From assembly GCF_006345805.1 (NCBI RefSeq), contig NW_021835683.1, forward strand, positions 1 through 39,246: a stretch of DNA of 39,246 nt, written 5' to 3'. The notes under the pieces are model-generated. The model was not told where the DNA came from. It did not search any database and worked only from the letters and a program-made list of their open reading frames with translations. Source of the DNA: Octopus sinensis (Eukaryota). Every line of letters begins with the position of its first letter. Positions within the stretch are counted from its first letter, which is position 1. Of this stretch, positions 6,548 through 31,296 are shown in pieces. Made by a program: the position numbers and the translations under genes.

Positions 6548-8266
6548 TTATTTCTTTATTGCCCACAAGGGGCTAAACATAGAGGGGACAAACAAGAACA
6601 GACAAACGGATTAAGTCGATTATATCGACCCCAGTGCGTAACTGGTTCTTAATTTATCGACTCCGAAAGGATGAAAGACAAAGTCGACCTCGGCGGAATT
6701 TGAACTCAGAACGTAACGGCAGATGAATTACCTATTTCTTTACTACTCGCAAGGGGCTAAACACAGAGAGGACAAACAAGGACAGACAAACGGATTAAAT
6801 CGATTATATCGACCCCAGTGCGTAACTGGTACTTATTTAATCGATCCCGAAAGGATGAAAGACAAAGTCGACCTCGGCGGAATTTGAACTCAGAACGTAA
6901 CGGCAGATGAATTACCTATTTCTTTACTACTCGCAAGGGGCTAAACACAGAGAGGACAAACAAGGACAGACAAACGGATTAAATCGATTATATCGACCCC
7001 AGTGCGTAACTGGTACTTATTTAATCGATCCCGAAAGGATGAAAGACAAAGTCGACCTCGGCGGAATTTGAACTCAGAACGTAACGGCAGATGAATTACC
7101 TATTTCTTTACTACTCGCAAGGAGCTAAACACAGAGAGGACAAACAAGGACGACAACGGATTAAATCGATTATATCGACCCCAGTGCGTAAGTGGTACTT
7201 ATTTAATCGATCCCGAAAGGATGAAAGACAAAGTCGACCTCGGCGGAATTTGAACTCAGAACGTAACGGCAGATGAATTACCTATTTCTTTACTACTCGC
7301 AAGGAGCTAAACACAGAGAGGACAAACAAGGACAGACAAACGGATTAAATCGATTATATCGACCCCAGTGCGTAAGTGGTACTTATTTAATCGATCCCGA
7401 AAGGATGAAAGACAAAGTCGACCTCGGCGGAATTTGAACTCAGAACGTAACGGCAGATGAATTACCTATTTCTTTACTACTCGCAAGGAGCTCAACACAG
7501 AGAGGACAAACAAGGACAGACAAACGGATTAAATCGATTATATCGACCCCAGTGCGTAAGTGGTACTTATTTAATCGATCCCGAAAGGATGAAAGACAAA
7601 GTCGACCTCGGCGGAATTTGAACTCAGAACGTAACGGCAGATGAATTACCTATTTCTTTACTACTCGCAGGGTAAACACAGAGGGACAACAAGGACAGAC
7701 AAACGGATTAAATCGATTATATCGACCCCAGTGCGTAAGTGGTACTTATTTAATCGATCCCGAAAGGATGAAAGACAAAGTCGACCTCGGCGGAATTTGA
7801 ACTCAGAACGTAACGGCAGATGAATTACCTATTTCTTTACTACTCGCAAGGAGCTAAACACAGAGAGGACAAACAAGGACAGACAAACGGATTAAATCGA
7901 TTATATCGACCCCAGTGCGTAAGTGGTACTTATTTAATCGATCCCGAAATGAGATGAAAAGACAAAGTCGACCTCGGCGGAATTTGAACTCAGAACGTAA
8001 CGGCAGATGATTACCTATTTCTTTACTACTCGCAACTACTACTCGCAAGAGCTAACACAGGAGGACACACAGGACAGACAAACGGATTAAATCGATTATA
8101 TCGACCCCAGTGCGTAACTGGTACTTATTTAATCGATCCCGAAAGGATGAAAGACAAAGTCGACCTCGGCGGAATTTGAACTCAGAACGTAACGGCAGAC
8201 GAAATACCTATTTCTTTACTACTCGCAAGGGGCTAAACACAGAGAGGACAAACAAGGACAGACAAG
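6548..8266 (-). repeat. Tandem array of about 9.3 headless family A SINE units, period ~184 bp
   Basis: AGATGAATTACC anchor at 6721, 6905, 7089, 7271, 7455, 7639 and 7818; unit equals the family A body lacking the 5' ~47 nt. Confidence 0.95.
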
Positions 8267-8298
8267 CTGTCAAATTTAACACGAACACCCAGCAAATT

Positions 8299-8460
8299 CG
8301 TGGGTTCGATTCTTGGCTAGAGTAGGGCGTTGTATCGTTAAGCAAGGCCTTTCATATCACGTTACTTCTGTCTACTCAGTTGAAAAGGGAAACCAGCCAA
8401 ATATTAGAGCAGCCCTTCCTATCCTCAGCTGTCACATTGTCGATGTTACCCTGGGCCAAA
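8299..8460 (+). mobile_element. Diverged family D SINE fragment
   Basis: GGGTTCGATTC B-box followed by GCGTTGT...AGCAAG...TCACGTT...CTACTCAGTTG, similar to 18980-19060. Confidence 0.4.
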
Positions 8461-8974
8461 GGTGCTAAGATTCAAAATATTCTCTTTGCTTTTCATTACA
8501 AAGACACTTAAATAAACAACCAGAGAAAGCTGTAAGCTCCTTACTCGTTTGCGACTGACGGCTGGTTTGTATGTTTATGAGCGAATGTGTACGTGTGTTC
8601 TTCAACTCATTAAACTGTCCATTTAAAAATTTTTCTTGCCAAGAATTCTGTTTGCAGCATCGCTGGGAACAGCAAAATGGCACCACCACCCCTACCAAAA
8701 CATAAAACGATTGCGGTTTCATCTCTTCGAATGAAATTCTTTGAAGTTATTGAAACTAAATTTCGTTCAATCGATTGATCTGATCGAACGAAACGTGGGA
8801 TGATTATTTTTTTTATTCTTTTACAAAATGCTTAATCTTTTCATGGCAAGATCATGGATGTTTCATGGCCATTTTCGACCAAGTCTTCCCTATCTCAAAG
8901 AAATCTTGTACAGTTTCTGTTGTGAAACTTCCCACATTGGGATAGAATAACAAAGTCGAAAGTTCAAATGAAGA

Positions 8975-9135
8975 GTGGCGGTGATGGTGGTTGTGTTGGT
9001 GGTAGTTGTCTTGGCGGTGGTGATGGTTATGATAATGATGGTGGTGGTGCCAGTGGTGAAGTGGTGGTAGGGATGGTGGTGGTTGTGGTTATGGTGGAGA
9101 TGGATGTAGCGTTGGTGGTGATAGTGGTGGTAGTG
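8975..9135. repeat. Degenerate (GGT)n microsatellite
   Basis: Direct inspection. Confidence 0.85.
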
Positions 9136-9227
9136 GATCTCCGTCGTTCGACGATGAGGATTTCGTTGTTTGATCTACCGAATTACCTTCTCTAGAGTTA
9201 ATCAGTAAGTGGTTGAGTATCCCGCAA

Positions 9228-9327
9228 GTATGTGTGCCCGTAATGTAATTCCTAGGCAGAATCAGCCTGACGCCGTGTACGACAAGGTTGTACTTTTGAA
9301 TTCAATGTACAATCAATCCAACAGGCT
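9228..9327 (-). mobile_element. Diverged fragment of the 3' half shared by families C and D
   Basis: Similar to the reverse complement of 21540-21640. Confidence 0.45.
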
Positions 9328-9527
9328 TCAGTATAGTTTCCGTCCACCCAGTTTCACTTTGAAGGTTCAGTCGTCATGAAACTACAGAAAATACTTCTGT
9401 GAATGTCTGTTCGTTCATCCAAGATTTTGTCAATTCCAACATCAATACAAACAACAACAACATTGGCAATCAATAGTATTACTTGGTAAAATATGTAGAA
9501 TCACTGTATATAGAATCCGCAGCATCA

Positions 9528-9575
<48 letters not shown>

Positions 9576-9584
9576 CATTATTAA

Positions 9585-9800
9585 GGTGGCGAGCTGGCAG
9601 AATCGTTAGCGCGCCGAGCTAAATGCATAGCGGCATTTCGTCCGTCGCTACGTTCTGAGTTCAAATTCCGCCGAGTTTGACTTTGCCTTTCATCCTTTTC
9701 GGGGTCGATGAATTAAATACCAGTTGCGTACTGGGGTCGATCAAATCGACTGGCCTCCTCATTCAAAATTTCAGGCCTCTGTACCTATAATAGAAGGGAA
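9585..9800 (+). mobile_element. Family A SINE, subfamily A2 tail, between (TAT)n tracts
   Basis: A-box-like TGGCAGAATCGTTAG, B-box GAGTTCAAATTC, body GACTTTGCCTTTCATCC..GGGGTCGAT, tail AAAATTTCAGGCCT...AGAAGGG(ATT)n. Confidence 0.85.
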
Positions 9801-9820
9801 TATTATTATTATTATTATTA

Positions 9821-9854
<34 letters not shown>

Positions 9855-9900
9855 GTTGTTGTTGTTATTGTTGTTGTTGTTGTTGTTGTTGTTGTATAAA

Positions 9901-10184
9901 GCGATGATCTGGCAGAATCGTTAGCACGCTGGGCTAAATGCTTAGCGGTATTTCGCCTGCCGTTACGTTGTGAGTTCAAATTCTGCCGAGGTCGACTTTG
10001 CCTTTCATCCTTTCGGGGGTCGATAAATTAAGTACCAGTTACGCACTGGGGTCGATGTAATCGACTTAATACCTATGTCTGTCCTTGTTTGTCCCCTCTG
10101 TGTTTAGCCCCTTGTGGGTAATAAAGAAATAGGTATTTCGCCTGCCGTTACGTGTTTAGCCCCTTGTGGGCAATAAAGAAATAA
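9901..10184 (+). mobile_element. Family A SINE (A1 tail) plus a short internally deleted second unit
   Basis: Tail AAAGAAATA joined to GGTATTTCG at 10131/10132, then a second tail ending at 10184. Confidence 0.85.
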
Positions 10185-10210
10185 TGATATTATTTATTTA
10201 TTTATTTATT

Positions 10211-10570
10211 TATTTCGTCTGTCGTTACGTCCTGAGTTCAAATTCCGCCGAGGTCGACCTTGCCTTATCATTCTTTCGGGGTCGATAAATTAAGTACCAG
10301 TGAAACACTGGGTGTGGATGTAATCGACTCGCCTTTACCCTCAACATTTCAGGCCTTGTGCCCTTAGTAGAAAGGATTATTATTATTTATTTATTTGTTT
10401 ATTTCGTCTGTCGTTACGTTCTGAGTTCAAATTCCGCCGAGGTCGACCTTGCCTTATCATTCTTTCGGGGTCGATAAATTAAGTACCAGCGAAACACTGG
10501 GTGTGGATGTAATCGACTCGCCCTTACCCCAACGTTTCAGGCCTTGTGCCTTTAGTAGAAAGGGTTATTA
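10211..10570 (+). mobile_element. Tandem dimer of headless A2 SINE units
   Basis: Two near-identical ~189-bp units both starting TATTTCGTCTGTCG (10211, 10400) after ATT/ATTT tails. Confidence 0.85.
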
Positions 10571-10984
10571 TTATCATTGCTGTTGCTGTTGTTGTTGTTG
10601 TTGTTTTTGTAGTTTAATTAAACCCAAATTTTAATTCGCAAGTTGTAATAACATTTATATTAACACTGAACATGTTTAAGCTATTTTTATAATTAGATCT
10701 TGCAGTTTTTGGTTTCATCATTCAAGTCTGGATTTAAATTTACCCCGAATCAATTTATATTAAAATACGCCATATTTATGCCATCAACACTTAAAAACCA
10801 AACTTTATAATTCCTGAATCGCACCAACACTTCGTTGCTAAAAACATGCTAGAGCGATTTTTTTCTAATTATAATATTTAATTTCTTAGTTACTTAATTA
10901 CAATCTTGCAATCAAAATTTATTCGCCAAGAATTTGCTGTTCAAATTCATAATTTACAGAAGAAAACTAATACGTTCGTGTAAT

Positions 10985-11066
10985 AGCTTGTGTGTGAGTG
11001 TGTGTGTGTGTGTGTGTTGTGTGTGTGCGCGTGTGTGCGTGTGTGTGTGTGTTGGTGTGTGTGTGT

Positions 11067-11113
<47 letters not shown>

Positions 11114-11326
11114 TGTGTGTGTGTGTGTGCGTGGGTGTGTGTGTGTGTGTGCGTGTGTGTGTGTAGTGTGTGCGTGTATGTTGTGTGTGTGGTGTGTGTG
11201 GCGCGTGTGTGTGTGTTGTGTATGTGTGTGTTGTGGTGTTGTGTGTGTGTGCGCGTGTGTGTGTGTGTGTGGTGTGTGTGTGTGCGTGGTGTGTGTGTGT
11301 GTGTGGTGTGGGCGTGTGTGTGTGTG

Positions 11327-11380
<54 letters not shown>

Positions 11381-11651
11381 AACGAGTGTTTATGTATGCC
11401 CGTTTGTATGCATGTGCGAGCTGACGTGTGTATGTGTGTGTGTTTTGTGTGTTAGCGTGTGCGTGTGTGAGTCTCTTTGAGATTGCAAGTGTTCGTGTGA
11501 ATGTGCGCGTGTGTAGGTGGTGGGGTGTGGGGGTGGGGGTATTAAATGTGAATGTCTTTGTGCGTGTGTATGTTTGTAGGTGTATTCTATCACTCTCTTA
11601 CTCTATCTGTCTATCTCCCTCTCTTTCTATTTCTCTATCTGTCTATTTCTC

Positions 11652-11686
<35 letters not shown>

Positions 11687-11750
11687 AGCTAGCTCATTCT
11701 CTCGCTCTCTGTCTATCTATCTACCTAGCTCACTCTGTCGCTCTCTCTCT

Positions 11751-11828
<78 letters not shown>

Positions 11829-12250: not shown

Positions 12251-12717
12251 TATAGAAATTTCAGACAAAATTTTTTTTGGCCTCCATATTCTTTCTTATG
12301 TTGCGTTCAATTTCGATTTTTATCTTTCTTCCTTCTGTTGTCTTCTTGTTTTAACACTCTCTTAAAAAAAAAAAAAGTTATCTGATGTCATATCAAAAAT
12401 ATTCTTCTCTAACATTCAGGTTCTTTTTTTATATTCTTCTTTATTCTTGCTAATCTTAGTAACTCCGAAAATCTATTGTTATTGTATGTCGTCGTTCTTC
12501 TTAATATGGTTTTTTCTTCTTATTTCTACTAATGTCATTTCTTTTTCATTCAATTATATTTTTGTTTATGAAATCCGATGCTAACTATATATTGCTGTTT
12601 TCTTTCTTTTCTTTTCTTCATTTTAATCTCGACTCTACAGGTTAAATCTCGTGCAATATTTATGTGAGAGATGTCCGTGTTTACTCTGTTTAGAATCTCC
12701 ATACATTTATATTTGTT

Positions 12718-12811
12718 AATAATAATAATGATAATAATAATATGATAATAATAATAATAAATAATAATATGATAATGATAATAATAATAATAATAATAAT
12801 AATATAATAAT

Positions 12812-12842
<31 letters not shown>

Positions 12843-12971
12843 TAATAATGATAATAATAATAATAATATAATAATAATGATAATGATAATAATAATATAA
12901 TAATATAATAACAAATATAATAATGATATAATAATAATAACAATAATAATAATAATAATAATAATAATAAC

Positions 12972-13029
<58 letters not shown>

Positions 13030-13067
13030 AATAATAATATAATAATAATAATGATAATAATAATAAT

Positions 13068-13110
<43 letters not shown>

Positions 13111-13386
13111 TAATAATATATAATAATAAATAATAATATAATAACAACAACAACAACAAACAATAATATAATAATAATAATAATATAATAATAACAATAA
13201 TAATAATAATAATAATGATAATAATAATAATAACAATATATAATAATAATAATAATAAATAATAATATAATAATAATAATAATGATAATGATAATAATAA
13301 TATAATAATAATATGATAATAATAATAATAATAATAATAATACAATAATAATAATGATGAGATAATAATACAATAATAATAATAAC

Positions 13387-13419
<33 letters not shown>

Positions 13420-13562
13420 TAATATAATAACAACAACACAACAACAATAATAATAATAATAATAATAATAACAATAATAATAATAATAATAATGATAATA
13501 ATAATAATAACAATAATAATAATAATAATAATAATAATGATAATAATAATAATAACAATAAT
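12718..13562. repeat. ~850-bp degenerate (TAA)n microsatellite
   Basis: Direct inspection. Confidence 0.95.
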
Positions 13563-13964
13563 AATTCTTTCCACCATAGGCACAAGGCCTGAAATTTCGG
13601 GGGGAGGGGACTGGTCAGTTACGTCGACCCCAGTGTTTCACTGGTACTTAATTTATAGAACCCCAAAAGGATGAAACGCAAAGTCGACCTCGGCGGAATT
13701 TGAACTCAGAACGTAGTAACAGGCGAAATACCTATTTCTTTACTACCCACAAGAGGCTAAACACAGAGAGGACAAACAAGGACAGACAAACGGATTAAGT
13801 CGATTATGTCGACCCCAGTGCGTAACTGGTTCTTATTTAATCGACCCCGAAAGGATGAAAGGCAAAGTCGACCTCGGCGGAATTTGAACTCAGAACGTAG
13901 CGGCAGACGAAATACAGCTAAGCATTTTCGTCCGGCGCGCTAATGATTCTGCCAGCTCGCTGCC
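13562..13964 (-). mobile_element. Chimeric family A dimer: full A1 followed by headless A2
   Basis: Junction at 13732/13733 reads AAAGAAATA|GGTATTTCGCC on the minus strand; the two units have different tails. Confidence 0.85.
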
Positions 13965-14041
<77 letters not shown>

Positions 14042-14325: not shown

Positions 14326-14472
14326 GCCCTGATGCAGTACCAGGCAGTGGCTCTCATGGCTTCTGATCTAAAATGATTAGAAGTGTTATCATGTACGTTG
14401 TTTTGTCTTGGCATAAAAGATGGGCTACAGCAAATATTCTGCTCAATACCACATATCTGCTTGTCAGTTGTT
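14042..14472 (+). mobile_element. Element E: 3' part (14042-14270), (AAT)n, then 5' part (14322-14472)
   Basis: Both parts align to the copies at 24953-25445 and 35883-36346, but in permuted order. Confidence 0.8.
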
Positions 14473-14490
14473 TCTGCCAGCTCGCCGCCT

Positions 14491-14717
14491 TAACATATTA
14501 AGAATATTGGAGTTGCTGTGAGGCTCGAGATAATCCAGAAGACAGCATTGTTGGGTACAGCGTGCATTCTAAGGTGAGTATTGTCACTTTGAGTCACAGG
14601 AGAAGGCATTACTTGTAACCTTTGGTGATTTGTTATTGCCTGCCTTCAAGTAAAGAATAACCAGTAATTAAGAACTATCCGAGAGTCTTTCAGAATAATA
14701 ACAACCACAATAATAAT
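14491..14717 (+). mobile_element. 3' end of an R4/Dong-type RLE LINE (second lineage)
   Basis: Translates HIKNIGVAVRLEIIQKTALLGTACILR*VLSL*, matching the Dong C-terminus IQKIALLGTAHILR; followed by a 3' UTR and AAT tail. Confidence 0.7.
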
Positions 14718-16993: not shown

Positions 16994-18339
16994 TAGTTCC
17001 TCCTGTCATCTTCCGCTTATTGACTAATTCCTCCTGTCATCTACCGCTTATTGACTAGTTCTTCCTGTCATCTATTGTTATTGACTAGTTCTTCCTGTCA
17101 TTCACAGTTTATTGATTAGTTCTTCCTGTCAGCCACAGCTTATTGACTAGTTCCTCCTGTCATCCACTCCTTATTGACTAGTTCCTCCTGTCATCTACCG
17201 CTTATTGACTAATTCCTCGTGACATCTACCGCTTATTGACTTGTTCTTCCTGTCATCTATTGTTATTGACTAGTTCTTCCTGTCATTCACAGTTTATTGA
17301 TTAGTTCTTCCTGTCATCTATTGTTATTGACTAGTTCCTCCTGTCATCCACTCCTTATTGACTAGTACCGCCTGTCATCCACTCCTTATTGACTAGTTCC
17401 TCCTGTCATCTACTCCTTATTGACTAGTTCCTCCTGTCATCCACTCCTATTGACTAGTTCCTCCTGTCATCCACTCCTTATGACTAGTTCTCCTGTCATC
17501 CACTCCTTATTGACTAGTTCCTCCTCCATCCACTCCTTATTGATTAGTTCCTCCTGTCATCCACTCCTATTGACTAGTTCCTCCTGTCATCCACTCCTTA
17601 TTGACTAGTTCTCATGTCATCCACTCCTTATTGACTAGTTCCTCCTGTCATCCACTCCTTATTGACTAGTTCCTCCTGTCATCCACTCCTTATTGACTAG
17701 TTCCTCCTGTCATCCACTCCTTATTGACTAGTTCCTCCTGTCATCAACCTTATTGACTAGTTCCTCCTGTCATCCACTCCTTATTGACTAGTTCCTCCTG
17801 TCATCCACTCCTTATTGACTAGTTCCTCCTGTCATCCACTCCTTATTGACTAGTTCCTCCTGTCATCCACTCCTTATTGACTAGTTCCTCCTGTCATCCA
17901 CTCCTTATTGACTAGTTCCTCCTGTCATCCACTCCTTATTGACTAGTTCCTCCTGTCATCCCTCCTTATTGACTAGTTCCTCCTCCTGTCATCCACTCCT
18001 TATTGACTAGTTCCTCCTGTCATCCACTCCTTATTGACTAGTTCTAGTTCCTCCTGTCATCCACTCCTTATTGACTAGTTCCTCCTGTCATCCACTCCTT
18101 ATTGACTAGTTCCACCTGTCATCTACCGCTTATTGACTAGTTCCTCCTGTCATCCACTCCTCGTTGACTAGTTCCTCCTGTCATCCACTCCTTATTGACT
18201 AGTTCCTCCTGTCATCCACTCCTTGTTGACTAGTTCCTCCTGTCATCCACTCCTTATTGACTAGTTCTTCCTGTCAGCCACAGCTTATTGACTAGTTCCT
18301 CCTGTCATCCACTCCTTATTGACTAGTTCCTCCTTTCAT
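16994..18339. repeat. 31-bp minisatellite, about 43 copies (TTATTGACTAGTTCCTCCTGTCATCCACTCC)
   Basis: Period 31 seen directly (e.g. 17641 vs 17672); no spacers. Confidence 0.95.
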
Positions 18340-18930: not shown

Positions 18931-19487
18931 GGAAGGCTCGTGGCTTAGTGGTTAGGGCATTCGGCTCATGGTCATAAGTTCGATCCCCGGCGGCGCGTTG
19001 TGTCTCTTTAGCAAAACACTTTATTTCACGTCGCTTCAGTCCACCCAGCTGGCAAAAACGAGTGATACCTATTTCTTTACTACCCACAAGGGGCTAAACA
19101 TAGAGGGAACAAACACAGACAGACATAGGTATTAAGTCAATTACATCGACCCCAGTGCGTAACTGGTACTTAATGTATCGACCCCCGAAAGGATGAAAGG
19201 CAAAGTCGACCTCGGCGGAATTTGAACTCAGAACGTAACGACAGACGCAATACGGCTACGCATTTCGCCCGGCATGCTAATATTTCTGCCAGCTCGCCGC
19301 CGTGATACCTGTAATTCAAAGGGGCCAGTTATGTCACATTCTGTGTCACACTGAATTTCCCAGGGAACTACGTTAAAGATACGCGTGTCTGTGGAGTTCT
19401 CAGCCGCTTGCACGTTAATTTCACGAGAAGCCTCTTCCGTTGATCGGATCAACTGGAGCGCTCGTCGTCGTAACCGACGGAGTGCCA
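18931..19487 (+). mobile_element. Family D tRNA-derived SINE interrupted by a family A copy
   Basis: Head TGGCTTAGTGGTTAGGGC..GTTCGATCCC; 3' half 19311-19487 matches family C 21550-21735. Confidence 0.75.
19071..19301 (-). mobile_element. Full-length A1 SINE with 9-bp TSD
   Basis: GTGATACCT at 19062-19070 and 19302-19310. Confidence 0.9.
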
Positions 19488-19536: not shown

Positions 19537-19906
19537 AAGTCAAATTTTTGCCACAGGGGCAGCTTGGGGGTGGGGGAGGGGGAGATGAGTCGATCACATC
19601 GATCTCAGTTGTTCAACTGGTACTAAATTTATCGACCCCGAAAGGATAAACAGCAAAGTCAACCTCAGAACGTATCGACAGGCGAAATACCTATTTCTTT
19701 ACTACCCAGAAGGGGCTAAACACTGAGAGGACAAACAAGAACAGACAAACGGATTAAGTCGATTATATTGACCCCAGTGCGTAACTGGTACTTATTTAAT
19801 CGACCCGAAAGGATGAAAGGCAAAGTTGACCTCGGCAGAAATTCGAACTCAGAACGTAAAGACGAACGAAATACCGACATGCTATCAATCCTGCCAGCTC
19901 GCCGCC
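19537..19906 (-). mobile_element. Chimeric family A dimer: full A1 followed by headless A3
   Basis: Junction at 19691/19692 reads AAAGAAATA|GGTATTTCGCC; downstream unit has a different C-rich tail. Confidence 0.8.
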
Positions 19907-20464
19907 TTCCTATGTATGTATATTATGTATAATGCTTCCCATGTATGTATATTGCTTACAAAAACTGACTCATGTATAATCATTCATGGACGCGTTAATA
20001 CTGAAAACTCTAAATATATATATTCATACACCTCGACTTTCCTAAACGCATTTGGATGATTACATATGTGGATTCGTATTGACTTGCATTTCTTATCGTT
20101 AAGAAGTTTCTTTTTTATATTGATAAGGAACCAATTTATTTTATGAAGAAATTGTTATCGTGACAAAATTGAGTCGAAATTAGGAAAAATGTGTGTATGT
20201 ATATATATACATATATATATATTCCACTTCAGAAATGAAAAGTAAGAACAAAATTGTTTTGAGTACGCGAAAGAAATAGTTATATTGATAAAAAGAAAAC
20301 AGAAGATTCTAGTCTATTATGGAAGCAAGAAACGTTTACGAGATATAAGCTAAACTAAGCGAATCCTGCAATTAAATCAAGAACGCTACTCAGATATTTT
20401 TACCAATCATGCAGTCAGAAATACATTGATGCATAATTTTGTCGGCAAAGCAAGCTCGAAGTGT

Positions 20465-20630: not shown

Positions 20631-20942
20631 GGCTCGACAGTAGTAACTACTCCATCGCCGAATGGTTTGGCTAAATCCAGACTAAGTATATATATATATT
20701 TACCATACAAATTAATGGCTGATTTTGTGAAATGCTAATTGGGAAAATTATAAAATAGCGAAGGCAGCTATGTGCAATATAATACCAAAAAGATAAAGAA
20801 TTCAGTTGTCACTAACTGTGACTGAGGGTGCTGGGAAGCACCTATATTGCTAGAAATAGAAGTTAAAAACCCTTACAGCTGCAAGAAAGCACATTTTTTC
20901 ATCTGCTGACAGGGGAGACAATTGTGTCTTTCATACGGTATA

Positions 20943-21174
20943 TATTTCTTTATTACCCACAAGGGGCTAAACACAGAGGGGACAAACAAGGACAGACAAA
21001 CGGATTAAGTCGATTACATCGACCCCAGTGCGTAACTGGTAGTTAATTTATCGACCCCGAAAGGATGAAAGGCAAAGTTGACCTCGGCAGAATTTGAACT
21101 CAGAACGTAGCGACGGGCGAACTACCGCGAAGCACTTCGCCCGGCGTGCTAACGTCTCTGCCAGCTCGCCGCCT
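20943..21174 (-). mobile_element. Full-length A1 SINE with 18-bp TSD
   Basis: TGTCTTTCATACGGTATA at 20925-20942 and 21175-21192; defines the monomer tail as ...AAAGAAATA. Confidence 0.9.
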
Positions 21175-21193
21175 TGTCTTTCATACGGTATAG

Positions 21194-21775
21194 TCGCACG
21201 CATGGTTATGTGGTGAGAAGTTTGCTTCCCAACCACACAGCTTCGGGTTCAGTCCCACTGCGTGGTACCTTGGGCAAATGCCTTGTACTAAAGCCCCAGA
21301 CTGTCCAAGGCCTTGTGTATGTGGTTGTGTGTGTGTGTGTGTGTGTGTGATGTGGAGGCGCAATGGCCCAGTGGTTAGGGCAGCGGACTCGCGGTCGTAG
21401 GATCGCGGTTTCGATTTCCAGACCGGGCGTTGTGAGTGTTTATTGAGAGAAAACACCTAAAAAGCTCCACGAGGCTCCGGCAGGGGATGGTGGTGATCCC
21501 TGCTGTACTCTTTCACCACAACTTTCTCTCACTCTTACTTCCTGTTTCTGTTGTACCTGTATTTCAAAGGGCCAGCCTTGTCACTCTCTGTGTCATGCTG
21601 AATATGCCCGAGAACTACGTTAAGGGTACACGTGTCTGTGGAGTGCTCAGCCACTTACACGTTAATTTCACGAGCAGGCTGTTCCGTTGATCGGATCAAC
21701 CGGAACCCTCGTCGTCGTAACCGACGGAGTGCTTCCATCCAGTGTGTGTGATAGACGGAAACTGTGGAAGCCTAT
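21194..21775 (+). mobile_element. Family B 5' half split by a family C insertion
   Basis: B head at 21194-21340; continues AGACGGAAACTGTGGAAGCC after 21752. Confidence 0.65.
21352..21741 (+). mobile_element. Family C tRNA-derived SINE, full length, 11-bp TSD
   Basis: tRNA-like head GGCGCAATGGCCCAGTGGTTAGGGC..GGTTTCGATT; TSD GTGTGTGTGAT at 21341-21351 and 21742-21752. Confidence 0.85.
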
Positions 21776-22989: not shown

Positions 22990-24930
22990 CATTTATTCAT
23001 AGAGTGCTCTATGAATTTTATGATTGTTGGTGCAACAAAGTAGCACCAACAATCATAAAATTCATAGAGCACTCTATGAATAAATGGCAAACAGTCCTAC
23101 ACCTCCAAACAAAAGAGGGACTCATGAAAACCAAAGACATCCCCATTAGAAGAGGAATATTCCAGGGAGACACGCTCTCTCCACTCCTTTTCTGCTTGGC
23201 ACTGTCACCTCTATCTGATATGCTAAATAGAACTGGATGCGGATATAAATGTTACGGCAAAACGATCAGCCACCTTTTATATATGGATGACCTAAAACTA
23301 TACGCTGCAAATGACAAACAGCTGGAAACACTATTAAAGACAGTTCATGGATTTACCAAAGAAATAGATATGAAATTTGGATTAGAAAAATGCGCCAAGT
23401 AACCATGAAAAGAGGAAAACTAGTTAAGAGTAACAACATCACACTAGATAAAACCAATGAAATAAAAGAATTAGACCAAAGCCAAACTTACAAATACTTA
23501 GGAATCCATGAACTAGATAAGACACAACACACACAAATGAAAGAGAAAATAAAAAAAGAATATTATAGACGAGTTAGATCATACTAACAACAGAGCTCAA
23601 TGCTAAAAACAAGATAATAGGTATCAACACTTTAGCTGTCCCAGTTATAAGTTACAGCTACAATATCCTTAACTGGACACGAAATGAACTGTCCAAAATA
23701 GATAGGAAAACAAGAAAAATACTGACAGGATCTAGGATGCATCACCCCAAATCTGACATAGAAAGACTATATATACAAGGTATAGAAGGTGGTAGAGGCC
23801 TTATACAGCTGGAAAACTACTATAAAATAACCACCATAGGACTGCAAAAATACCTACTTCAGAAGGAAGGAAAACTGATCCAGATAGCAGCAAAACACGA
23901 GCAAAACAAAAAACTGTTCTCAGTATTTAAGGAAGCTGACAAATACAAACAAGAAATCATACCACCTAATAAACAAAGAAGAAGATGATGAAGAAACAAC
24001 AAAAGCTATAAAACAAATGAAATCCAAACTAAAAATAGAACAGCAACGAGCCATGATAAAACGATGGCAAGAAAAACCCCTTCATGGTAAATACTGCACT
24101 AAACTAAACGCAAAAGAAATAGACAAAGAAAAATCCCAGCAATGGTTGAGAAGCTCAGGACTCAAAGCAGAAACAGAGGGATTTTTAATTGCAGCACAAG
24201 ACCAAAGCCTCCCCACCAGAAATTACCAAAAACATGTAATGAAAAGAAATATTACAAGTAACTGCAGAATATGTGGAGATGGACAAGAAACAATAAATCA
24301 TATTATCTCTAGCTGCCCAGTCCTGGCTAAGAAGGAATATATTCACAGACATGACAGAGTTGGAACCTACATACATTGGAAGCTATGCCAACATTATGGA
24401 ATAACAACAGAAAAAAGATGGTATAGGCACACACCAGAAAAGGTCACAGAAAACGAGAAAGCAACCATACTCTGGGATATGCCGATACACACAGATAGAG
24501 AAATTAAGGCCAACAAACCAGATATAGTTGTCAGAGATCATGAAGAAAAAAAATGCTTTCTAATTGATGTATCAATACCGGCAGATGACAACGTGTCTCT
24601 AAAAGAAATGGAGAAACTCTCAAAATACAAAGACTGGAAATAGAGGTAACTAGAATGTGGAACCTGAAAACAGAAACAATTCCTATCATAGTAGGTGCAT
24701 TAGGCATGATAAAAAAATATTCAGACAAATACATAACAAAAACACCAGGACTTACAAACACATATAACATACAGAAAATTGCACTACTAGGCACTGCACA
24801 CATCCTACGCAGAACACTTTCCATACAATAACCATCAGAGCATCACAACAAATCACAGCACATACCCAAGGCACACAGAGCTGCGCTCGGTAGTGAAGTG
24901 AAAGCACGCTATAAAAATAAAACTACTGAA
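22990..24930 (+). mobile_element. 5'-truncated R4-clade (Dong/Rex6-like) non-LTR retrotransposon: C-terminal RT, CCHC knuckle and restriction-like endonuclease, four frameshifts
   Basis: GIFQGDTLSPLLF and YMDD (RT); CRICGDGQETINHIISSC; RHD; KPDIVV..DVSIP..EKLSKY (RLE); stop at 24829-24831; (TAA)n on both sides. Confidence 0.92.
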
Positions 24931-24952
24931 TAATAATAATAATAATAGTAAT

Positions 24953-25445: not shown

Positions 25446-25597
25446 CGTATAGTAGGCTTCATTGCCCTCCCCTCTCTGCCTCTTTCTTCTCTTCTTTTCT
25501 CCACTCTTAAGGAAAGAAAATCGATCGTATATATAATTCCTAAATGTTTTAAATGAATATAGACCGTCTAGTTTCATGATCCCAAGTTGCATTGCAT

Positions 25598-25917: not shown

Positions 25918-25939
25918 TACATATCTATTGATATTTAGG

Positions 25940-26750
25940 ATATGTGTAAGTGTATGCATGTGTGTGTATGTATGTGTCTTTGGGTTTATGCCTGTTTCCA
26001 CTCCTGCTTGACAACCGGTGTTGGCTAGTTTACCCTCCACCTTAACGTAGCAATTCGGCGAAAGAGACCGATAGAATCAGTACCAGGTTTTAAAAAGCCA
26101 TAATAAGGGCTGAGGCCGATTTGTTCGACTAAAACTCTCCTGCTTGACAACCGGTGTTGGCTAGTTTACCCTCCATCTTAACGTAGCAGTTCGGCGAAAG
26201 AGACCGATAGAATCAGTACCAGGTTTTAAAAAGCCATAATAAGGGCTGAGGCCGATTTGTTCGACTAAAACCCTCCTGCTTGACAACCGGTGTTGGCTAG
26301 TTTACCCTCCAACTTAACGTAGCAATTCGGCGAAAGAGACCGATAGAATCAGTACCAGGTTTTAAAAAGCCATAATAAGGGCTGAGGCCGATTTGTTCGA
26401 CTAAAACTCTCCTTCTTGACAACCGGTGTTGGCTAGTTTACCCTCCATCTTAACGTAGCAGTTCGGCGAAAGAGACCGATAGAATCAGTACCAGGTTTTA
26501 AAAAGCCATAATAAGGGCTGAGGCCGATTTGTTCGACTAAAACCCTCCTGCTTGACAACCGGTGTTGGCTAGTTTACCCTCCACCTTAACGTAGCAATTC
26601 GGCGAAAGAGACCGATAGAATCAGTACCAGGTTTATAAAAAGCCATAATAAGGGCTGAGGCCGATTTGATTTATTCGACTAAAACCCTTCAAGGCGATGC
26701 CCCAGCATGGCCGCACTCCAACGACTGAAACAAGTAAAAGGTTAAAAAAG
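25940..26750 (+). repeat. Family B 3' half with five tandem 136-bp units
   Basis: ACAACCGGTG anchor at 26011, 26147, 26283, 26419 and 26555; B tail at 26690-26750. Confidence 0.92.
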
Positions 26751-27013
26751 AATCTTTTTTTGTACTGATAAGAATTGATGACTTCTTCGACGTATGATGA
26801 AAGAGATGAAACATAAACAGCCATTCTGTCCCAGCTTTTGATTAATGATTTGACGGAGTGATGATAGATAAACAAAATAAATTATTGATGACAAAACTTA
26901 CTTTCTACAACATTTCCCGTGTCAGCTTGTAAAGCCTTGCTTTTTTTTTTTAGCCCAAAATACTAAAAACAAAAGCCACCCCCCCCCCCCAAATAAAACA
27001 AAACAAGAAATAA

Positions 27014-27176
27014 GGCGCAGGAGTGGCTGTGTGGTAAGTAGCTTGCTAAGCAACCACATGGTTCCGGGTTCAGTCCCACTGCGTGGCATCTTGGGTAAGT
27101 GTCTTCTGCTATAGCCCCGGGCCGACCAATGCCTTGTGAGTGGATTTGGTAGACGGAAACTGAAAGAAGCCTGTCG

Positions 27177-27274
<98 letters not shown>

Positions 27275-27490
27275 TTGTGTGTCTGTGTTGTCCCCCTAGC
27301 ATTGCTTGACAACCGATGCTGGTGTGTTTACGTCCCCGTCACTTAGCGGTTCGGCAAAAGAGACCGATAGAATAAGTACTGGGCTTACAAAGAATAATTC
27401 CTGGGGTCGATTTGCTCGACTAAAGATGGTGCTCCAGCATGGCCGCAGTCAAATGACTGAAACAAGTAAAAGAGTAAAAGAGTAAAGAGT
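27014..27490 (+). mobile_element. Full-length family B SINE (reference copy)
   Basis: tRNA-like head, central (TA)n, GGGGTCGATTTGCTCGAC, tail (AGTAAAAG)n. Confidence 0.9.
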
Positions 27491-27518
27491 ATATGCAAAA
27501 AAATAAAAAAAAAAGAAC

Positions 27519-27890
27519 GGGTGCAGACATGGCTGTGCAGTTAAGAAGCGCGCTTTATGACCACGTGGATTTGAGTTCAGTCCCATCGCAAGCCATGTTA
27601 GACTAATGTCTTCTGCTACGGCTTCGGGCCGACCAATGCCTTCTAAGTGAATTTTGTAGACGGAAAATGTGCGGAAGCCAGTCATGTACATAGTTTGGAT
27701 GATGATATGAAGATGGTATAGAAGATGGCACACACACACACACACACACAAACACACATACGACGGGCATCTTTCAGTTTCCGTCTTCCAAATCCACTCA
27801 CAAAGCTTTGGTCAGCCCGAGGCTACAGAAGACACTTGCCCAAGGTGTCACGCAGTGGGACAGAACCCAGAACCATTATTTGGGAAAGTA
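27519..27890. mobile_element. Two family B 5' halves in opposite orientation (27519-27690 plus, 27729-27890 minus)
   Basis: Both match the B head through AGACGGAAA. Confidence 0.65.
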
Positions 27891-27898
27891 GGCTAGAC

Positions 27899-28287
27899 GA
27901 TTACATCGACCCCAGTGTATAACTAGTATTTATTTCATCGACCCCGAAAGGATAAAAAGCAAAGTTGACCTCGGTAGAATTTGAACTCAGAACGTAGCGG
28001 TGGACGAAATACAGCTGAGCATTTCGTCCGACGTGCTAACGTTTCTGCCAGCTCTCTATTTCTTTACTACCCACAAGGGGCTAAACAGAGAGATGACAAA
28101 CAAGGACAGACAAACGGATTAAGTCGATTACATCGACCCAAGTGCGTAACTGGTACTTAATTTATCGACCCCTGAAGGATGAAAGGCAAAGTCGACCTCG
28201 GCGGAATTTGAACTCAGGACGTAACGGCAGACGAAATACGCCTACGCATTTCCCCCGGCGTGCTAACGATTCTGCCAGCTCTCTGCC
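27899..28287 (-). mobile_element. Family A dimer joined near the 5' end of the second unit
   Basis: Junction at 28056/28057 reads AAAGAAATA|GAGAGCTGGCAG. Confidence 0.8.
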
Positions 28288-28309
28288 TTATTCTCACCAA
28301 AATAATTCT

Positions 28310-28515
28310 TTCTACAATAAGCTTTAGGAATGAATTTTTTTTTGGGGGGGGGAGGCTGGTTGATTATATCGACCCCAGTGCGCAACTGGTGCTTATTTTA
28401 TTGGCCCTGGATGGATGAAAAGCAAAGTTGGCCTTGGCAGAATTTGAACTCACAAAATAGAATCTGGTAGAAACACTACTGTGGAGTGATAACGATTTGG
28501 GCCAGCTCGTGATCT
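28310..28515 (-). mobile_element. Old family A SINE
   Basis: ATCGACCCCAGTG...GGATGAAA..AAAGTTG..AATTTGAACTC...GCCAGCTCG. Confidence 0.65.
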
Positions 28516-29126
28516 TACCGTATACCAACCAAAATAATACATTATTTTGTATGACAGGTATATAAACGATTCCAATCTCTAGACAACCTTTATTTAACAC
28601 TTCAATTTTCGGATTCCACACAGTTTTTTTTTTCTCATTTTCCTATTTTCACAAATTTCCGAGTATAATTCAGTGGAGAAATTAATGTTAATGGCTTTGT
28701 ATACGTTGGAGATTGAAGAATTGAACAATATTACTGTTAATGTTACATTTATAGAAACATTGACCATTTTTTATGTTGGAACTTCAGATTAATTTAAGTA
28801 GAGTAAAAACACACACAGACACACACATGCATACACATATCATGGTAATATTCTATTAATTTTTCCATTATATCTTTTGTTTGTAACACTTTGCTTTTCC
28901 GACATGGCTGTTTTTACATTACTTGTGTTTAAAATGTGAGAAATTATTCTAGTTATAAGTGTCGTAGTATCTGATTTAAAAAAAAATGTTAGAACCAGGG
29001 TTTTTAATTGAGTCAAAAACTCGACGGAATTTTGGCTCTCTTCTATAGTGCTTTTTTTTACTAAAGCTACTAGCATGTATTTTGTCATGAAGAAAATTTG
29101 TTGATGTATAAATTAGCTGTGAACAC

Positions 29127-29285
29127 CAGGGGCATAGATTCCAGGGGTGCTGCACACCCATTAAAATTGCCAAATTCATTATAAACACTAACCTTACTCA
29201 TTAATTTAACACAAATTATAATGGAAAACTTTTGTTAGACCCCTACTTGGAATTTGGTGGTAATGGGTGTGGCAGCATACCCAGT
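29127..29285. mobile_element. Possible degenerate MITE with subterminal inverted repeats
   Basis: GGGGTGCTGCACACCCATTA (29144) versus TAATGGGTGTGGCAGCATACCC (29261); no TSD found. Confidence 0.3.
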
Positions 29286-29297
29286 ACAACAACCACC

Positions 29298-29493
29298 GTG
29301 GAGGCGCAATGGCCCAGTGGTTAGGGCAGCGGACTTGCGGTCGGAAGAACGCGGTTTCGACTCCCAGACCGGGCATTGTGAGTGTTTATTGAGCAAAAAC
29401 ACCTAAGCTCCACGAGGCTCCGGCGGGGGTGAGGTATGTTGAACCCCGCTGTACTCTTTCACCACAACTTTCTCTCTCTTTTTTCCTACTTCT
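29298..29493 (+). mobile_element. Family C SINE 5' half
   Basis: Colinear with 21352-21550. Confidence 0.85.
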
Positions 29494-29777
29494 GCCACAA
29501 AGCAGAGAAACCATGGTGTAACTCACTATGGTGTGGTAAACTTTCAGACCCTAGTCTAAATTGCGAATCCTCTGTACCCCAGGATGGTTCAGCTCTCCGC
29601 CCGTTGAAAGCCACCGTTTACGAAAAGAGGATAACAACGTAGCTTTCGCGCCCGTGCAACCGCCAGTCTATCGCGTGTGGTGGGTGGATCTTCAAGTTGC
29701 CACACGCATTCTTAGTAGCTTAGAGTAGGCTCGAATTAGAGATTATTCTTTGTGGCTAATGGCGTGAGTCCTGATTG

Positions 29778-29870
29778 GAAGAAGAAGAGAAGAAGAAGAA
29801 GAAGAAGAAGAAGAAGAAGAAGAAGAAGAAGAAGAAGAAGAAGAAGGAGGAGGAGGATAAGAAGAGAACA
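29778..29870. repeat. (GAA)n/(GGA)n microsatellite
   Basis: Direct inspection. Confidence 0.95.
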
Positions 29871-30235
29871 CAACAACCACCACCACTGGTAAACGAACCG
29901 AGTCAGTTCACAGCGCATCCTAACATGACTGTTGGATGCATGCCTTTCGGAGCAGTTATCTCCTCTTCTGCAACAGAGACCGGAAAGGCAGATGCTGCGA
30001 ACTGACATGAGAGACAAATCCCTCTTATAATATTCCCGGCGTCCTTCAATGACATGTTGAGCTATTCAGCGGTTCACTTCAAATATAATATGGAGTGACA
30101 GCGCCAAGCAGTGGAGTGTATAAAAACAAACTTTCAAACTGTTCAAACATGTTTGAGGCTTATTCGAACTCATAAGAAAGCCATTCGCTGTATTTTGTCA
30201 TGGAGAAAAGTTCTTGTTGTAGACGAATATGTGTA

Positions 30236-30458
30236 CAGTAATACCTCGATTATCGCGGATGTTAACGTTCCAAAACACCCCGCGATGGGTGAAAATCCGC
30301 GAAGTAGAAACAGTACTGTAAATTTTTATTTTTTTTTTATTTTTGTAATTTGTATATATTTATTTTATTATAAATGCAAAACAGTACCACGGAGTAATCG
30401 ACGTAAGCTTAAATAATAAACCGCGATAAGTGAACCGCAACATGGCGCGGGATTACTG
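30236..30458. mobile_element. Tc1/mariner pogo/Tigger-type MITE
   Basis: Ends CAGTAAT...ATTACTG, flanking TA dinucleotides at 30234-30235 and 30459-30460, CCGCG-rich subterminal repeats typical of Tigger MITEs. Confidence 0.8.
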
Positions 30459-30514
30459 TATGTACACCGAGTCAGTTCACTGCAGTACCTAACCAGACAG
30501 TGGTGGGATGCATA

Positions 30515-31296
30515 AGGCGGCGAGCTGGCAGAAACGTTAGCACGCCGGGCGAAATGCTTTGCGGTATTTCGTCTGCCGCTACGTTCTGGGTTCAAATTCC
30601 GCCGAGGTTGACTTTGCCTTTCATCCTTTCGGGGTCGATGAAATAAGTACCAGTTACGCACTGGGGTCGATATAATCGGCTTAATCCGTTTGTCTGTTCG
30701 TGTTTGTCCCCTCTGTGTTTAGCCCCTTGTGGGTAGTAAAGAAATAGGTATTCGTCTGCCGCTACGTTCTGGGTTCAAATTCCGCCGAGGTTGACTTTGC
30801 CTTTCATCCTTTCGGGGGTCGATGAAATAAGTACCAGTTACGCACTGGGGTCGATATAATCGGCTTAATCCGTTTGTCTGTTCTTGTTTGTCCTCTCTGT
30901 GTTTAGCCCTTGTGGGTAGTAAAGAAATAGGTATTTCGTCTGCCGCTACGTTCTGGGTTCAAATTCCGCCGAGGTTGACTTTGCCTTTCATCCTTTCGGG
31001 GTCGATGAAACAAGTACCAGTTACGCACTGGGGTCGATATAATCAGCTTAATCCGTTTGTCTGTTCGTGTTTGTCTCCTCTGTGTTTAGCCCCTTGTGGG
31101 TAGTAAAGAAATAGGTATTCGTCTGCCGCTACGTTCTGGGTTCAAATTCCGCCGAGGTTGACTTTGCCTTTCATCCTTTCGGGGTCGATGAAATAAGTAC
31201 CAGTTACGCACTGGGGTCGATATAATCGGCTTAATCCGTTTGTCTGTTCGTGTTTGTCCCCTTTGTGTTTAGCCCCTTGTGGGTAGTAAAGAAATG
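30515..31296 (+). mobile_element. Family A tetramer (one headed and three headless units) with a single 13-bp TSD
   Basis: GGTGGGATGCATA at 30502-30514 and 31297-31309; ~183-bp period; junctions AAATA|GGTATT(T)CG. Confidence 0.92.

What the first reader, a model, noticed from the sequence alone, without database searches (positions are those of the whole stretch)
6548..31296. Family A SINE multimers share one fixed junction in the loop of the tRNA-like head
Seen: at five separate loci (6548-8266, 10131, 13732, 19691, 30747-31114) the A1 3' end ...AAAGAAATA joins directly to GGTA(T/A)TTC, an internal position ~47 nt into the SINE. TSD-bounded monomers (e.g. 20943-21174) show GGTA is not part of the tail. 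In full copies this position is the last loop base of a conserved ~10-bp hairpin (GGCGAAATGC-TTAGCG-GTATTTCGTC, with compensatory variants such as GGGCGAA/TTCGCCC and AAATGC/GCATTT), at roughly the anticodon-arm position. The junction rebuilds a hairpin (GAAAT-AGGT-ATTTC) because the tail is complementary to the 3' arm. Established: R2-type RTs jump from the 5' end of one RNA to the 3' end of another, and tRNA-like loops are cleavage and modification sites. Inference: SINE RNA is cut or blocks RT at this loop and is then template-jumped, ligated or circularised, giving multimers. Simpler alternative: one dimeric master gene.
Basis: partly seen in the sequence, partly recalled or inferred. Interest (0 to 1): 0.8.

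Follow-up and report, generated by a model that had tools for sequence, protein, structure and literature searches.

The report
Octopus-type SINE multimers, one fixed junction
A short mobile element in this (octopus-like) genome repeatedly occurs as head-to-tail chains in which the exact end of one copy is fused to base 50 of the next. The sequence evidence favours copies landing inside older copies, followed by local array growth, over cutting or circularising of the element's RNA.

Summary
The string AAAGAAATA|GGTA occurs 16 times (about 0.14 expected). Fifteen are true tail-to-internal junctions at the five named loci. The sixteenth (19066-19078) is a monomer whose target-site duplication happens to begin AGGTAT. 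The head hairpin and the rebuilt junction hairpin both exist, but the claimed compensatory changes do not: 0 of 12 pairs change on both sides.

New findings:
- Two loci are heterodimers: a family A unit joined to a truncated unit of another family.
- Units within each long array share private variants, so the arrays grew locally.
- No unit starting at base 50 stands alone, against 12 full-length heads.
- Flanks after ordinary A tails resemble GGTATTTCG (P about 0.001).
- At 13732 the downstream unit looks older than the upstream one.
- No known ribozyme or tRNA model matches.

Best reading (0.4): A copies retrotranspose, in the same orientation, into position 49|50 of resident SINEs. The 5' end resolves inside the shared homology, and arrays then expand by unequal exchange.

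Rivals are inheritance from a few composite master genes (0.25), RNA cut or RT stop plus template jump (0.2), and an RNA circle (0.05). No genome-wide data were reachable, so the mechanism stays inferred.

The parts
6549..8265 (-). Array 1: one partial unit (starts at SINE position 177) plus 9 units of about 184 bp (G50 to tail), with 9 junctions AAAGAAATA|GGTA. It has no head and no clear TSD.
   Evidence: Units share private variants (TTTGTCTTT, GGGATCGATT, GCGAGT, GGTAATTCATC). The 3'-most unit (6549-6732) is chimeric: its 5' third is array-like, and its 3' part belongs to another subfamily with a GGGCAAT tail.
9898..10183 (+). Dimer: full-length A (9898-10131) joined at 10131|10132 to a G50-start A unit with an internal deletion (10132-10183).
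   Evidence: Both units carry GGTATTTCGCCTGCCGTTAC. The upstream unit shares AATACCTATGTC with monomer 19070-19301.
10188..10574 (+). Family B 189-bp dimer: an (ATT)n(ATTT)n tail fused to TATTTCGTCTG, about position 52 of the head.
   Evidence: The two units are 95% alike. The junction lies 2 nt from G50 but within ATTT microhomology.
13566..13966 (-). Heterodimer: full-length A (13733-13966), then tail|GGTATTTCGCC, then a G50-start family B unit (13566-13732). The B unit's (ATT)n tail is the 850-bp (TAA)n at 12717-13565.
   Evidence: CpG retention is 11/11 upstream against 6/11 downstream. Private changes are 2/93 against 8/94.
19587..19910 (-). Heterodimer: A (19692-19910; its head lacks 16 nt, and the deletion ends at G50), then tail|GGTATTTCGCC, then a G50-start unit with a third kind of 3' part (19587-19691; 3' end not defined).
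30502..31309 (+). Array 3: head plus 4 units (30515-31296) with 3 junctions. The whole array is flanked by a perfect 13-bp TSD, GGTGGGATGCATA (30502-30514 and 31297-31309).
   Evidence: All four units share private variants (CTGGGTTC, GAGGTTGAC, GATGAAATAAG, ATCGGC). They differ by 0-2% in the core.
30546..30575 (+). Head hairpin (12 bp, loop TTTGCG). The junction point C49|G50 is 30562|30563.
27895..28289 (-). A second kind of junction: A (28058-28289) with its tail joined to about position 7 of a B-type unit (27895-28057). The 15-mer AGAGAGCTGGCAGAA is repeated at 28043-28057 and 28270-28284 and includes a rare A at head position 8.
   Evidence: I read this as a TSD hidden in homology, i.e. 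a seamless nested insertion. It rests on one shared rare variant.
19062..19310 (-). Monomer A with the 9-bp TSD AGGTATCAC. Its 3' flank mimics the junction over 5-6 nt.
20926..21192 (-). Monomer A with the 17-bp TSD TATACCGTATGAAAGAC. It defines the element's 3' end as AAAGAAATA.
31331..31576 (-). Monomer A with the 10-bp TSD AGATAAATTC.

Best explanation
The junction is the scar of target-primed reverse transcription into a resident SINE. A family A RNA is copied from its normal start point (the last A of AAAGAAAUA) onto a nick between bases 49 and 50 of the head of an older, same-orientation copy of A, B or a third family.

The new cDNA is homologous to the resident copy, so I infer that second-strand synthesis is primed inside the shared sequence. 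The duplicated head and the TSD then vanish, and the product reads: one head, new unit, tail, then the resident copy from G50 onward.

I infer that the site is chosen by a target or primer-annealing preference for GGTAT-like sequence. Read-through RNA from existing multimers, which carries GGUAUUUCG right after the tail, probably reinforces this choice. Dimers then grow into arrays locally by unequal exchange.

- **Shown:** the exact junction, the heterodimers, local amplification of the arrays, the target-like flanks and the absence of solitary truncated units.
- **Inferred:** the nick position, the homology-based resolution and the role of read-through RNA.
For: - **The upstream side is a retrotransposition start.** In all 15 junctions it is the exact 3' terminus defined by three TSD-bounded monomers. 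By contrast, the DNA-level array at 26001-26668 has a boundary that lies inside an element.
- **G50 looks like a target.** Flanks after the 7 A tails that are not at a junction match GGTATTTCG for 5, 1, 1, 3, 0, 0 and 0 nt, a total of 10 against about 1.7 expected (P = 0.0012). Four of the seven start with G (P = 0.03).
- **No solitary truncated units.** All 6 independent units starting at position 50-52 follow a SINE tail. None stands alone, against 12 full-length heads.
- **Family pattern.** The upstream partner is always A, the youngest family (5-13% pairwise). The downstream partner is A, B or a third type (13-24% from the A copies and from each other).
- **Age asymmetry at 13732.** The upstream unit keeps 11/11 consensus CpGs and the downstream unit 6/11 (Fisher 0.035). 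Private changes are 2/93 against 8/94.
- **A second nested case.** At 28056 a different head position is used, with a 15-nt repeat that includes a rare variant. This shows that seamless same-orientation insertion occurs.
- **Local amplification.** Units within an array share private variants, and the end unit of array 1 is chimeric.
Against: - The window holds 51 other GGTAT sites outside these SINEs, and only one was used. A 5-mer preference therefore cannot make the hot spot. A longer match or homology-guided annealing has to be assumed.
- No intermediate with a duplicated head or a visible TSD at G50 is present.
- In both heterodimers the two copies of the presumed TSD agree for only 8-9 nt.
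- Locus 19691 shows no age asymmetry: CpG retention is 6/10 upstream against 7/9 downstream.
- The private-change counts are confounded by family differences.
- The CGCC variant just after the junction is shared by 3 of 5 junction loci but only 2 of 12 heads, which hints at common descent.
- All units of array 3, including the supposed resident, share private variants.
- This is a single 39-kb window. I had no empty sites and no partner LINE.
Confidence: 0.4

Rival explanations
1. **Inherited junction.** The fusion arose once or a few times, by any rare event. It persists because dimeric or composite SINE master genes (A-A, A-B', A-D') are transcribed from the single head promoter and retrotransposed as units. 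Arrays grow by unequal exchange. Heterodimers arise by swapping the 3' module in the shared core, or by RNA-templated conversion of resident copies.
For: - Array 3 (head plus 4 units) sits inside one perfect 13-bp TSD.
- No T4 terminator occurs in array 3, the 10131 dimer or heterodimer 19691.
- Four of five junction loci have an upstream unit of one subfamily (TTAAATAAG / ATATAATCG).
- CGCC follows the junction in 3 of 5 loci.
- The GGTAT-like flanks of monomers fit priming on junction-bearing read-through RNA.
- These families are already mosaics that share head and core.
Against: - It needs at least three or four distinct masters with the same junction, or crossovers close to it.
- The upstream unit at 10131 belongs to another subfamily and shares four changes with monomer 19070-19301.
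- The age asymmetry at 13732 argues against simultaneous insertion of both units, unless the decay happened in the master.
Confidence: 0.25
2. **First reader's model.** SINE RNA is cleaved at C49|G50, or the RT stops there. The enzyme then re-initiates on the tail of another SINE RNA (template jump), or the fragments are joined by an RNA ligase. This gives multimers with one head at the 5' end.
For: - The breakpoint sits at the loop/3'-arm boundary of a strong conserved hairpin.
- The tail can pair with the 3' arm to rebuild a nicked stem-loop.
- Heterodimers and single-headed multimers fit the model.
- A 16-nt head deletion at 19910 also ends at G50.
- R2-type template jumping is established knowledge (from my own recall; not tested here).
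Against: - There are no solitary G50-start insertions, although a cut RNA keeps the tail that the RT recognises.
- Units of one array share private variants.
- The model does not predict GGTAT-like flanks at ordinary insertions.
- In heterodimers the first-copied RNA has a different tail, and so probably a different LINE partner, yet the A tail is joined at its exact normal end. A pol III transcript has no defined 3' end there (inference).
- No known ribozyme matches.
- The downstream unit at 13732 appears older than the upstream unit.
Confidence: 0.2
3. **RNA circle.** The 184-nt RNA from G50 to the tail is circularised, as in a retrozyme, and copied by rolling-circle reverse transcription into arrays.
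For: - Array 1 starts mid-unit, with no head and no TSD.
- Units within an array are near-identical.
- The junction forms a small hairpin.
Against: - Array 3, the 10131 dimer and both heterodimers carry a head or mix families, which a circle cannot give.
- Blocks of neighbouring units in array 1 share variants, which indicates stepwise duplication.
- No hammerhead, HDV-like, twister or other ribozyme family matches at E up to 10. I also found no CUGANGA box by eye.
Confidence: 0.05
4. **Purely DNA-level tandem duplication.** The 184-bp segment is duplicated by slippage between the internal GGTAT and a GGTAT-like flank.
For: - Some flanks begin GGT or GGTAT.
- DNA-level arrays of SINE segments exist in the window.
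Against: - It cannot give heterodimers.
- The terminal flanks of array 1 and of the 10131 dimer lack GGT.
- Five identical breakpoints in 39 kb are too many for 3-5-nt microhomology.
Confidence: 0.03

Closest known systems
Dimeric and composite tRNA-derived SINEs (for example Twin SINE of Culex, dimeric Alu, plant SINE dimers)
   Same: Head-to-tail multi-unit SINEs with a single 5' pol III promoter region. They are flanked as a whole by one TSD and can amplify as a unit.
   Different: Here the second unit lacks its first 49 nt. The fusion point is internal and identical across homo- and heterodimers, and chains reach 4 to 9 units.
Target-specific non-LTR retrotransposition guided by pairing of read-through RNA with the target (R1Bm, R2; Dong-type elements in (TAA)n). 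This is from my own knowledge, not tested here.
   Same: TPRT starts precisely at a fixed sequence. Repeated hits create tandem arrangements. RNA downstream of the element's end can anneal to the nicked target.
   Different: The target would be the SINE's own head rather than rDNA or a microsatellite. A monomers also insert at diverse sites, and no partner LINE was identified.
Chimeric retrocopies made by RT template switching (U6-L1 type chimeras; R2 template jumping)
   Same: The 3' end of one RNA copy is joined directly to the 5' boundary of another within one TSD-flanked insertion.
   Different: In the known cases the 5' boundary of the first-copied RNA varies. Here it is fixed to one base, and solitary truncated copies are absent.
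Retrozymes and ribozyme-bearing SINE-like satellites (Schistosoma Sm-alpha, newt satellite 2)
   Same: Tandem units of about 180 nt from a small non-autonomous retroelement, with a fixed unit boundary.
   Different: No hammerhead or other known self-cleaving motif was found. Heads and mixed-family units are present.
SINE-derived satellites and transposon-to-tandem-repeat transitions in molluscs
   Same: A dispersed element seeds tandem arrays that then expand and homogenise locally.
   Different: The repeat boundary coincides with the retrotransposition terminus and recurs at independent loci.

Membership tests
tRNA-derived SINE | Internal pol III B box (GGTTCGANNCC-like), with an A-box region upstream | tested here: met
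   GGTTCAAATTCC is present in every unit. The A-box-like GCTGGCAGAA occurs only in heads. Promoter function was not tested.
tRNA-derived SINE | Recognisable similarity to a tRNA | tested here: not met
   ARAGORN finds no tRNA. No Rfam model, tRNA included, matches the head at gathering score or at E up to 10. The head is at best a strongly diverged tRNA relic.
tRNA-derived SINE | Dispersed copies flanked by variable TSDs | tested here: met
   TSDs of 9, 10, 13 and 17 bp.
tRNA-derived SINE | 3' end shared with a partner LINE | tested here: inconclusive
   The only LINE remnant in the window (23004-24945; RVT_1 and zf-RVT) ends in (AAT)n, and the BLAST search with the full family A element found no match within it.
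Retrozyme / ribozyme-bearing tandem retroelement | Self-cleaving ribozyme that defines the unit ends | tested here: not met
   No Rfam ribozyme family matches at gathering score or at E up to 10 across a full junction. I found no CUGANGA core by eye. A novel ribozyme is not excluded.
Retrozyme / ribozyme-bearing tandem retroelement | Circular RNA of unit length | not testable with these tools
   Needs RNA data.
Template-jump chimeric retrocopy | Units derive from independent RNA molecules joined during one TPRT event | tested here: inconclusive
   Heterodimers fit this. However, array units share private variants, and the two units at 13732 differ in apparent age.
Nested, target-specific TPRT insertion | Insertion terminus abuts a recurrent target sequence that other insertions also prefer | tested here: met
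   There are 15 junctions at one base. Flanks of the other A copies resemble GGTATTTCG (P about 0.001).
Nested, target-specific TPRT insertion | Target-site duplication, and an empty (pre-insertion) site | tested here: inconclusive
   A TSD would be hidden in the homology. Shared variants fit this at 10131 and 28056 but agree for only 8-9 nt at 13732 and 19691. Empty sites could not be tested.

The most novel reading that the evidence does not exclude
The SINE RNA is cleaved in its anticodon-like loop by host tRNA-processing machinery. The 184-nt 3' fragment is held by tail/3'-arm pairing as a nicked stem-loop and is ligated to another SINE tail or to its own. This would yield ribozyme-free linear multimers and circles that are then reverse-transcribed: a retrozyme-like cycle driven by tRNA repair and splicing enzymes.
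Probability: 0.08. Interest if true: 0.85.

Novelty: new variant of a known kind. Interest (0 to 1): 0.45.

Why it matters
If the leading reading holds, this SINE homes into the head of its own relatives with single-base precision and so turns dispersed copies into tandem arrays. That would be a concrete, repeatable route from a mobile element to a satellite in a genome where SINEs are very abundant. It would also be an example of target choice guided by the element's own read-through RNA.

If the RNA-level reading holds instead, it would link tRNA-loop processing to retroelement multimerisation.

Either way, the junction is a clean genome-wide marker, and counting it would separate these models. 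I found no description of it in the searchable literature.

Tried and rejected
**Getting more copies.** None of these gave cephalopod DNA:
- A protein search with a junction-spanning ORF found nothing.
- Two metagenome scans, one genome scan and one viral scan with core patterns returned either nothing or chance matches that I did not inspect further: L001-L002 from metagenome contigs and L003-L006 from bacterial genome bins.
- A literature sequence search found nothing.

**Known RNA families.** Nothing reached gathering score, and only a chance match at E = 9.2 appeared at the permissive threshold.

**Manual ribozyme search.** I looked by eye for a hammerhead (CUGANGA, NUH) or an HDV-like fold starting at G50. 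There is no core box and no P2 partner.

**A second tRNA-like fold.** I tested whether G50 is the 5' end of such a fold, which RNase P might cut, through the helix GGUAUUU/AAGUACC.
- 88.5% of cells pair and there is one double change (copy 20943), but 27-34 of 500 shuffles do as well.
- G50 itself pairs in only 9 of 14 copies.
- RNAalifold does not predict the helix.
- The fold energy is ordinary (z = +0.9).
I left this as inconclusive.

**Whole-element folds.** They are not exceptional (z = -0.9 and +0.7).

**Tail/3'-arm complementarity as a primer for TPRT.** I rejected this because it would give the inverted orientation.

**Unequal recombination at the shared GAAAT of tail and 5' arm.** I rejected this because it predicts a junction that keeps the loop, which is not seen.

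**Age asymmetry as a general test.** It is clear at 13732 and absent at 19691.

**Typing the head of heterodimer 13732 as B-like.** Two rare variants are shared with one B-type copy, but its body does not match that copy. I judged this too weak to use.

Full report
**Setting.** The window is eukaryotic, rich in microsatellites, and carries several SINE families. These include CORE-type copies like those described from octopus and a decayed LINE reverse transcriptase.

The family studied here ('A') is about 232 nt long:
- a head, AAGGCGGCGAGCTGGCAG...;
- a 12-bp hairpin at positions 33-62;
- a B box, GGTTCAAATTCC;
- a core shared with other families;
- an A-specific 3' part ending ...CCCCTTGTGGGTAGTAAAGAAATA.

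Family B and a third type share the head and core but have other 3' parts. B ends in (ATT)n.

AAAGAAATAGGTA occurs 16 times exactly. At up to one mismatch there are 20 hits, against 0.14 expected.
- Fifteen hits are true junctions between the last base of an A tail and G50 of a following unit. Nine are in array 6549-8265, three in array 30514-31296, and one each at 10131, 13732 and 19691.
- The sixteenth (19066-19078) is a monomer whose 9-bp TSD, AGGTATCAC, imitates the junction.
- Three monomers with TSDs of 9, 10 and 17 bp fix the element's end at AAAGAAATA.

The head hairpin is real. Across 10 heads, 92.5% of pair cells are paired, against 33-52% for slid controls, and it folds at -18.3 kcal/mol with z = -3.2. 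It shows no two-sided compensatory change, so that part of the claim fails. The small hairpin rebuilt at the junction is also real but modest (-8.9 kcal/mol, z = -2.5).

**What the multimers are made of.**
1. Array 30514-31296 is one head plus four units inside a perfect 13-bp TSD. Its units share five private variants and differ by 0-2%.
2. Array 6549-8265 starts mid-unit. Its units share other private variants, with blocks of neighbouring units sharing further ones. Its last unit is a chimera of array-type and foreign sequence.
   - Both arrays therefore grew by copying their own units. They are not chains of independent RNAs.
3. At 13732 and 19691 the downstream unit belongs to another family, B and a third type. 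At 10131 both units are A but of a different subfamily from the other junction loci. A single A-A master dimer therefore cannot explain all loci.
4. A family B pair at 10188-10574 has its (ATT)n(ATTT)n tail fused 2 nt from the same point. ATTT microhomology and flanking microsatellites could explain that by themselves.
5. At 28056 an A tail is joined to about position 7 of a B-type copy. The same 15 nt, including a rare variant, sit in the 'A' head upstream. This looks like a TSD hidden in homology, that is, a nested same-orientation insertion resolved seamlessly.

**Clues to mechanism.**

The upstream side of every junction is the exact point where reverse transcription normally starts. In contrast, a 136-bp array of another SINE-like element (26001-26668) has boundaries inside the element, as DNA-level duplication gives. 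The junction was therefore born in a reverse-transcription event. What remains open is whether G50 was the end of a previous RNA template or a nick in DNA.

Four observations favour DNA:
- **No solitary truncated units.** All six independent units that start at position 50-52 follow a SINE tail. None stands alone, against 12 full-length heads. A cut RNA would keep its tail and should sometimes insert alone.
- **Target-like flanks.** The flanks after the seven A tails that are not at a junction match GGTATTTCG for 5, 1, 1, 3, 0, 0 and 0 nt (P about 0.001). Four of the seven begin with G. So G50 resembles the sites, or the primer-annealing sequence, that A uses elsewhere.
- **Family pattern.** The upstream partner is always A, the youngest family. 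The downstream partners are A, B or the third type.
- **Age difference at 13732.** The upstream unit keeps 11 of 11 consensus CpGs and the downstream unit 6 of 11 (Fisher 0.035). The downstream unit also has more private changes, as expected if a young A landed in an old B.

In addition, the A tail in heterodimers ends at its normal base. A polymerase III transcript has no reason to end there, and the first-copied RNA has a different tail and so probably a different LINE partner. This last step is my inference.

**Limits of that reading.**
- The window has 51 other GGTAT sites outside these SINEs, and only one was used. A simple endonuclease preference is therefore not enough.
  - I infer help from longer pairing. 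The most plausible source is read-through RNA from existing multimers, which carries GGUAUUUCG after the tail, or the general homology between cDNA and the resident copy.
- No intermediate with two heads is present.
- The presumed TSD copies in the heterodimers agree for only 8-9 nt.
- Locus 19691 shows no age difference.
- A CGCC variant just after the junction is shared by three of five loci, which hints at descent from a common dimer.

For these reasons, inheritance from a few composite master genes remains a serious rival. It would act with module exchange in the shared core. The two ideas can also act together: once a dimer exists, its RNA both copies and re-creates the junction.

**RNA-level models.**
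- No known ribozyme or tRNA model matches, even at E up to 10.
- Whole-element folds are unremarkable.
- A possible helix between the unit's first seven bases and AAGUACC about 85 nt downstream has one double change but is not significant.
- A circle cannot give heads or mixed families.

I keep the cut-and-jump model at about 0.2 and the circle at about 0.05. They are not refuted without RNA data.

**Comparison with known systems.**
- It works most like target-specific non-LTR insertion followed by a transposon-to-satellite transition.
- It looks like a dimeric SINE whose second unit is truncated.
- It is not a retrozyme by the ribozyme test.
- It meets the SINE criteria of a B box and TSDs, but the head is no longer recognisable as a tRNA.

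I found no description of this junction in the searchable literature.

**Verdict.**
The junction is retrotransposition-linked and is not explained by one simple master. The RNA-cut mechanism is not supported.
- It is a new variant of a known kind. Interest is 0.45.
- Genome-wide junction counts and empty-site comparisons would settle the question. No cephalopod sequence was reachable with the tools.

Noticed in passing
window 26001-26668 (+): A 136-bp tandem array of 4.9 units (97% matches) is built from an internal segment of another SINE-like element, whose core is related to the A/B core (...CGGCGAAAGAGACCGATAGAATCAGTACCAGG...). The last unit runs on into the rest of the element, so the repeat boundary is internal. 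This is a DNA-level duplication, unlike the family A arrays.
   Followed up: partly
window 10188-10574 (+): A family B 189-bp dimer (95% alike) has its (ATT)n(ATTT)n tail fused to TATTTCG, 2 nt from the A junction point. It lies directly after the A-A' dimer and downstream of a full-length B (9583-9790), so this is a compound cluster of five units.
   Followed up: partly
window 12717-13565: An 850-bp (TAA)n microsatellite is the expanded (ATT)n tail of the family B unit in heterodimer 13732. (TAA)n also flanks the head side (13965-14041).
   Followed up: no
window 19692-19910 (-): The head of this A copy lacks 16 nt, the 5' arm and loop of the hairpin. The deletion ends exactly at G50 and is flanked by CGG direct repeats. 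This is either a slippage deletion or another event at the same base.
   Followed up: partly
window 20943-21175 (-): This monomer carries a double change (GGTAGTT ... AACTACC) that keeps a long-range pair between position 54 and about position 136. It is the only two-sided covariation seen in the family.
   Followed up: partly
window 23004-24945 (+): A decayed LINE with reverse transcriptase (RVT_1) and zf-RVT domains in broken frames, ending in (AAT)n. The search with the full family A element found no match here, so it does not look like the partner of family A.
   Followed up: partly
window 14470-14491 (-): An isolated 22-nt fragment of the SINE head (AAGGCGGCGAGCTGGCAGAAAC), followed by unrelated sequence.
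   Followed up: no
window 8266-8420; about 21190-21300; about 27850-27900: Other SINE families. A tRNA-like element in the opposite orientation abuts the 5' edge of array 1. CORE-type (MIR-like, CCTTGGGCAA) copies lie beside monomer 20943 and at the 3' side of the B-type unit at 27895.
   Followed up: no
window 16994-18339 and 38173-38469: Minisatellites of 31 bp (43 copies, 90% matches) and 37 bp (8 copies) that are unrelated to the SINE.
   Followed up: no
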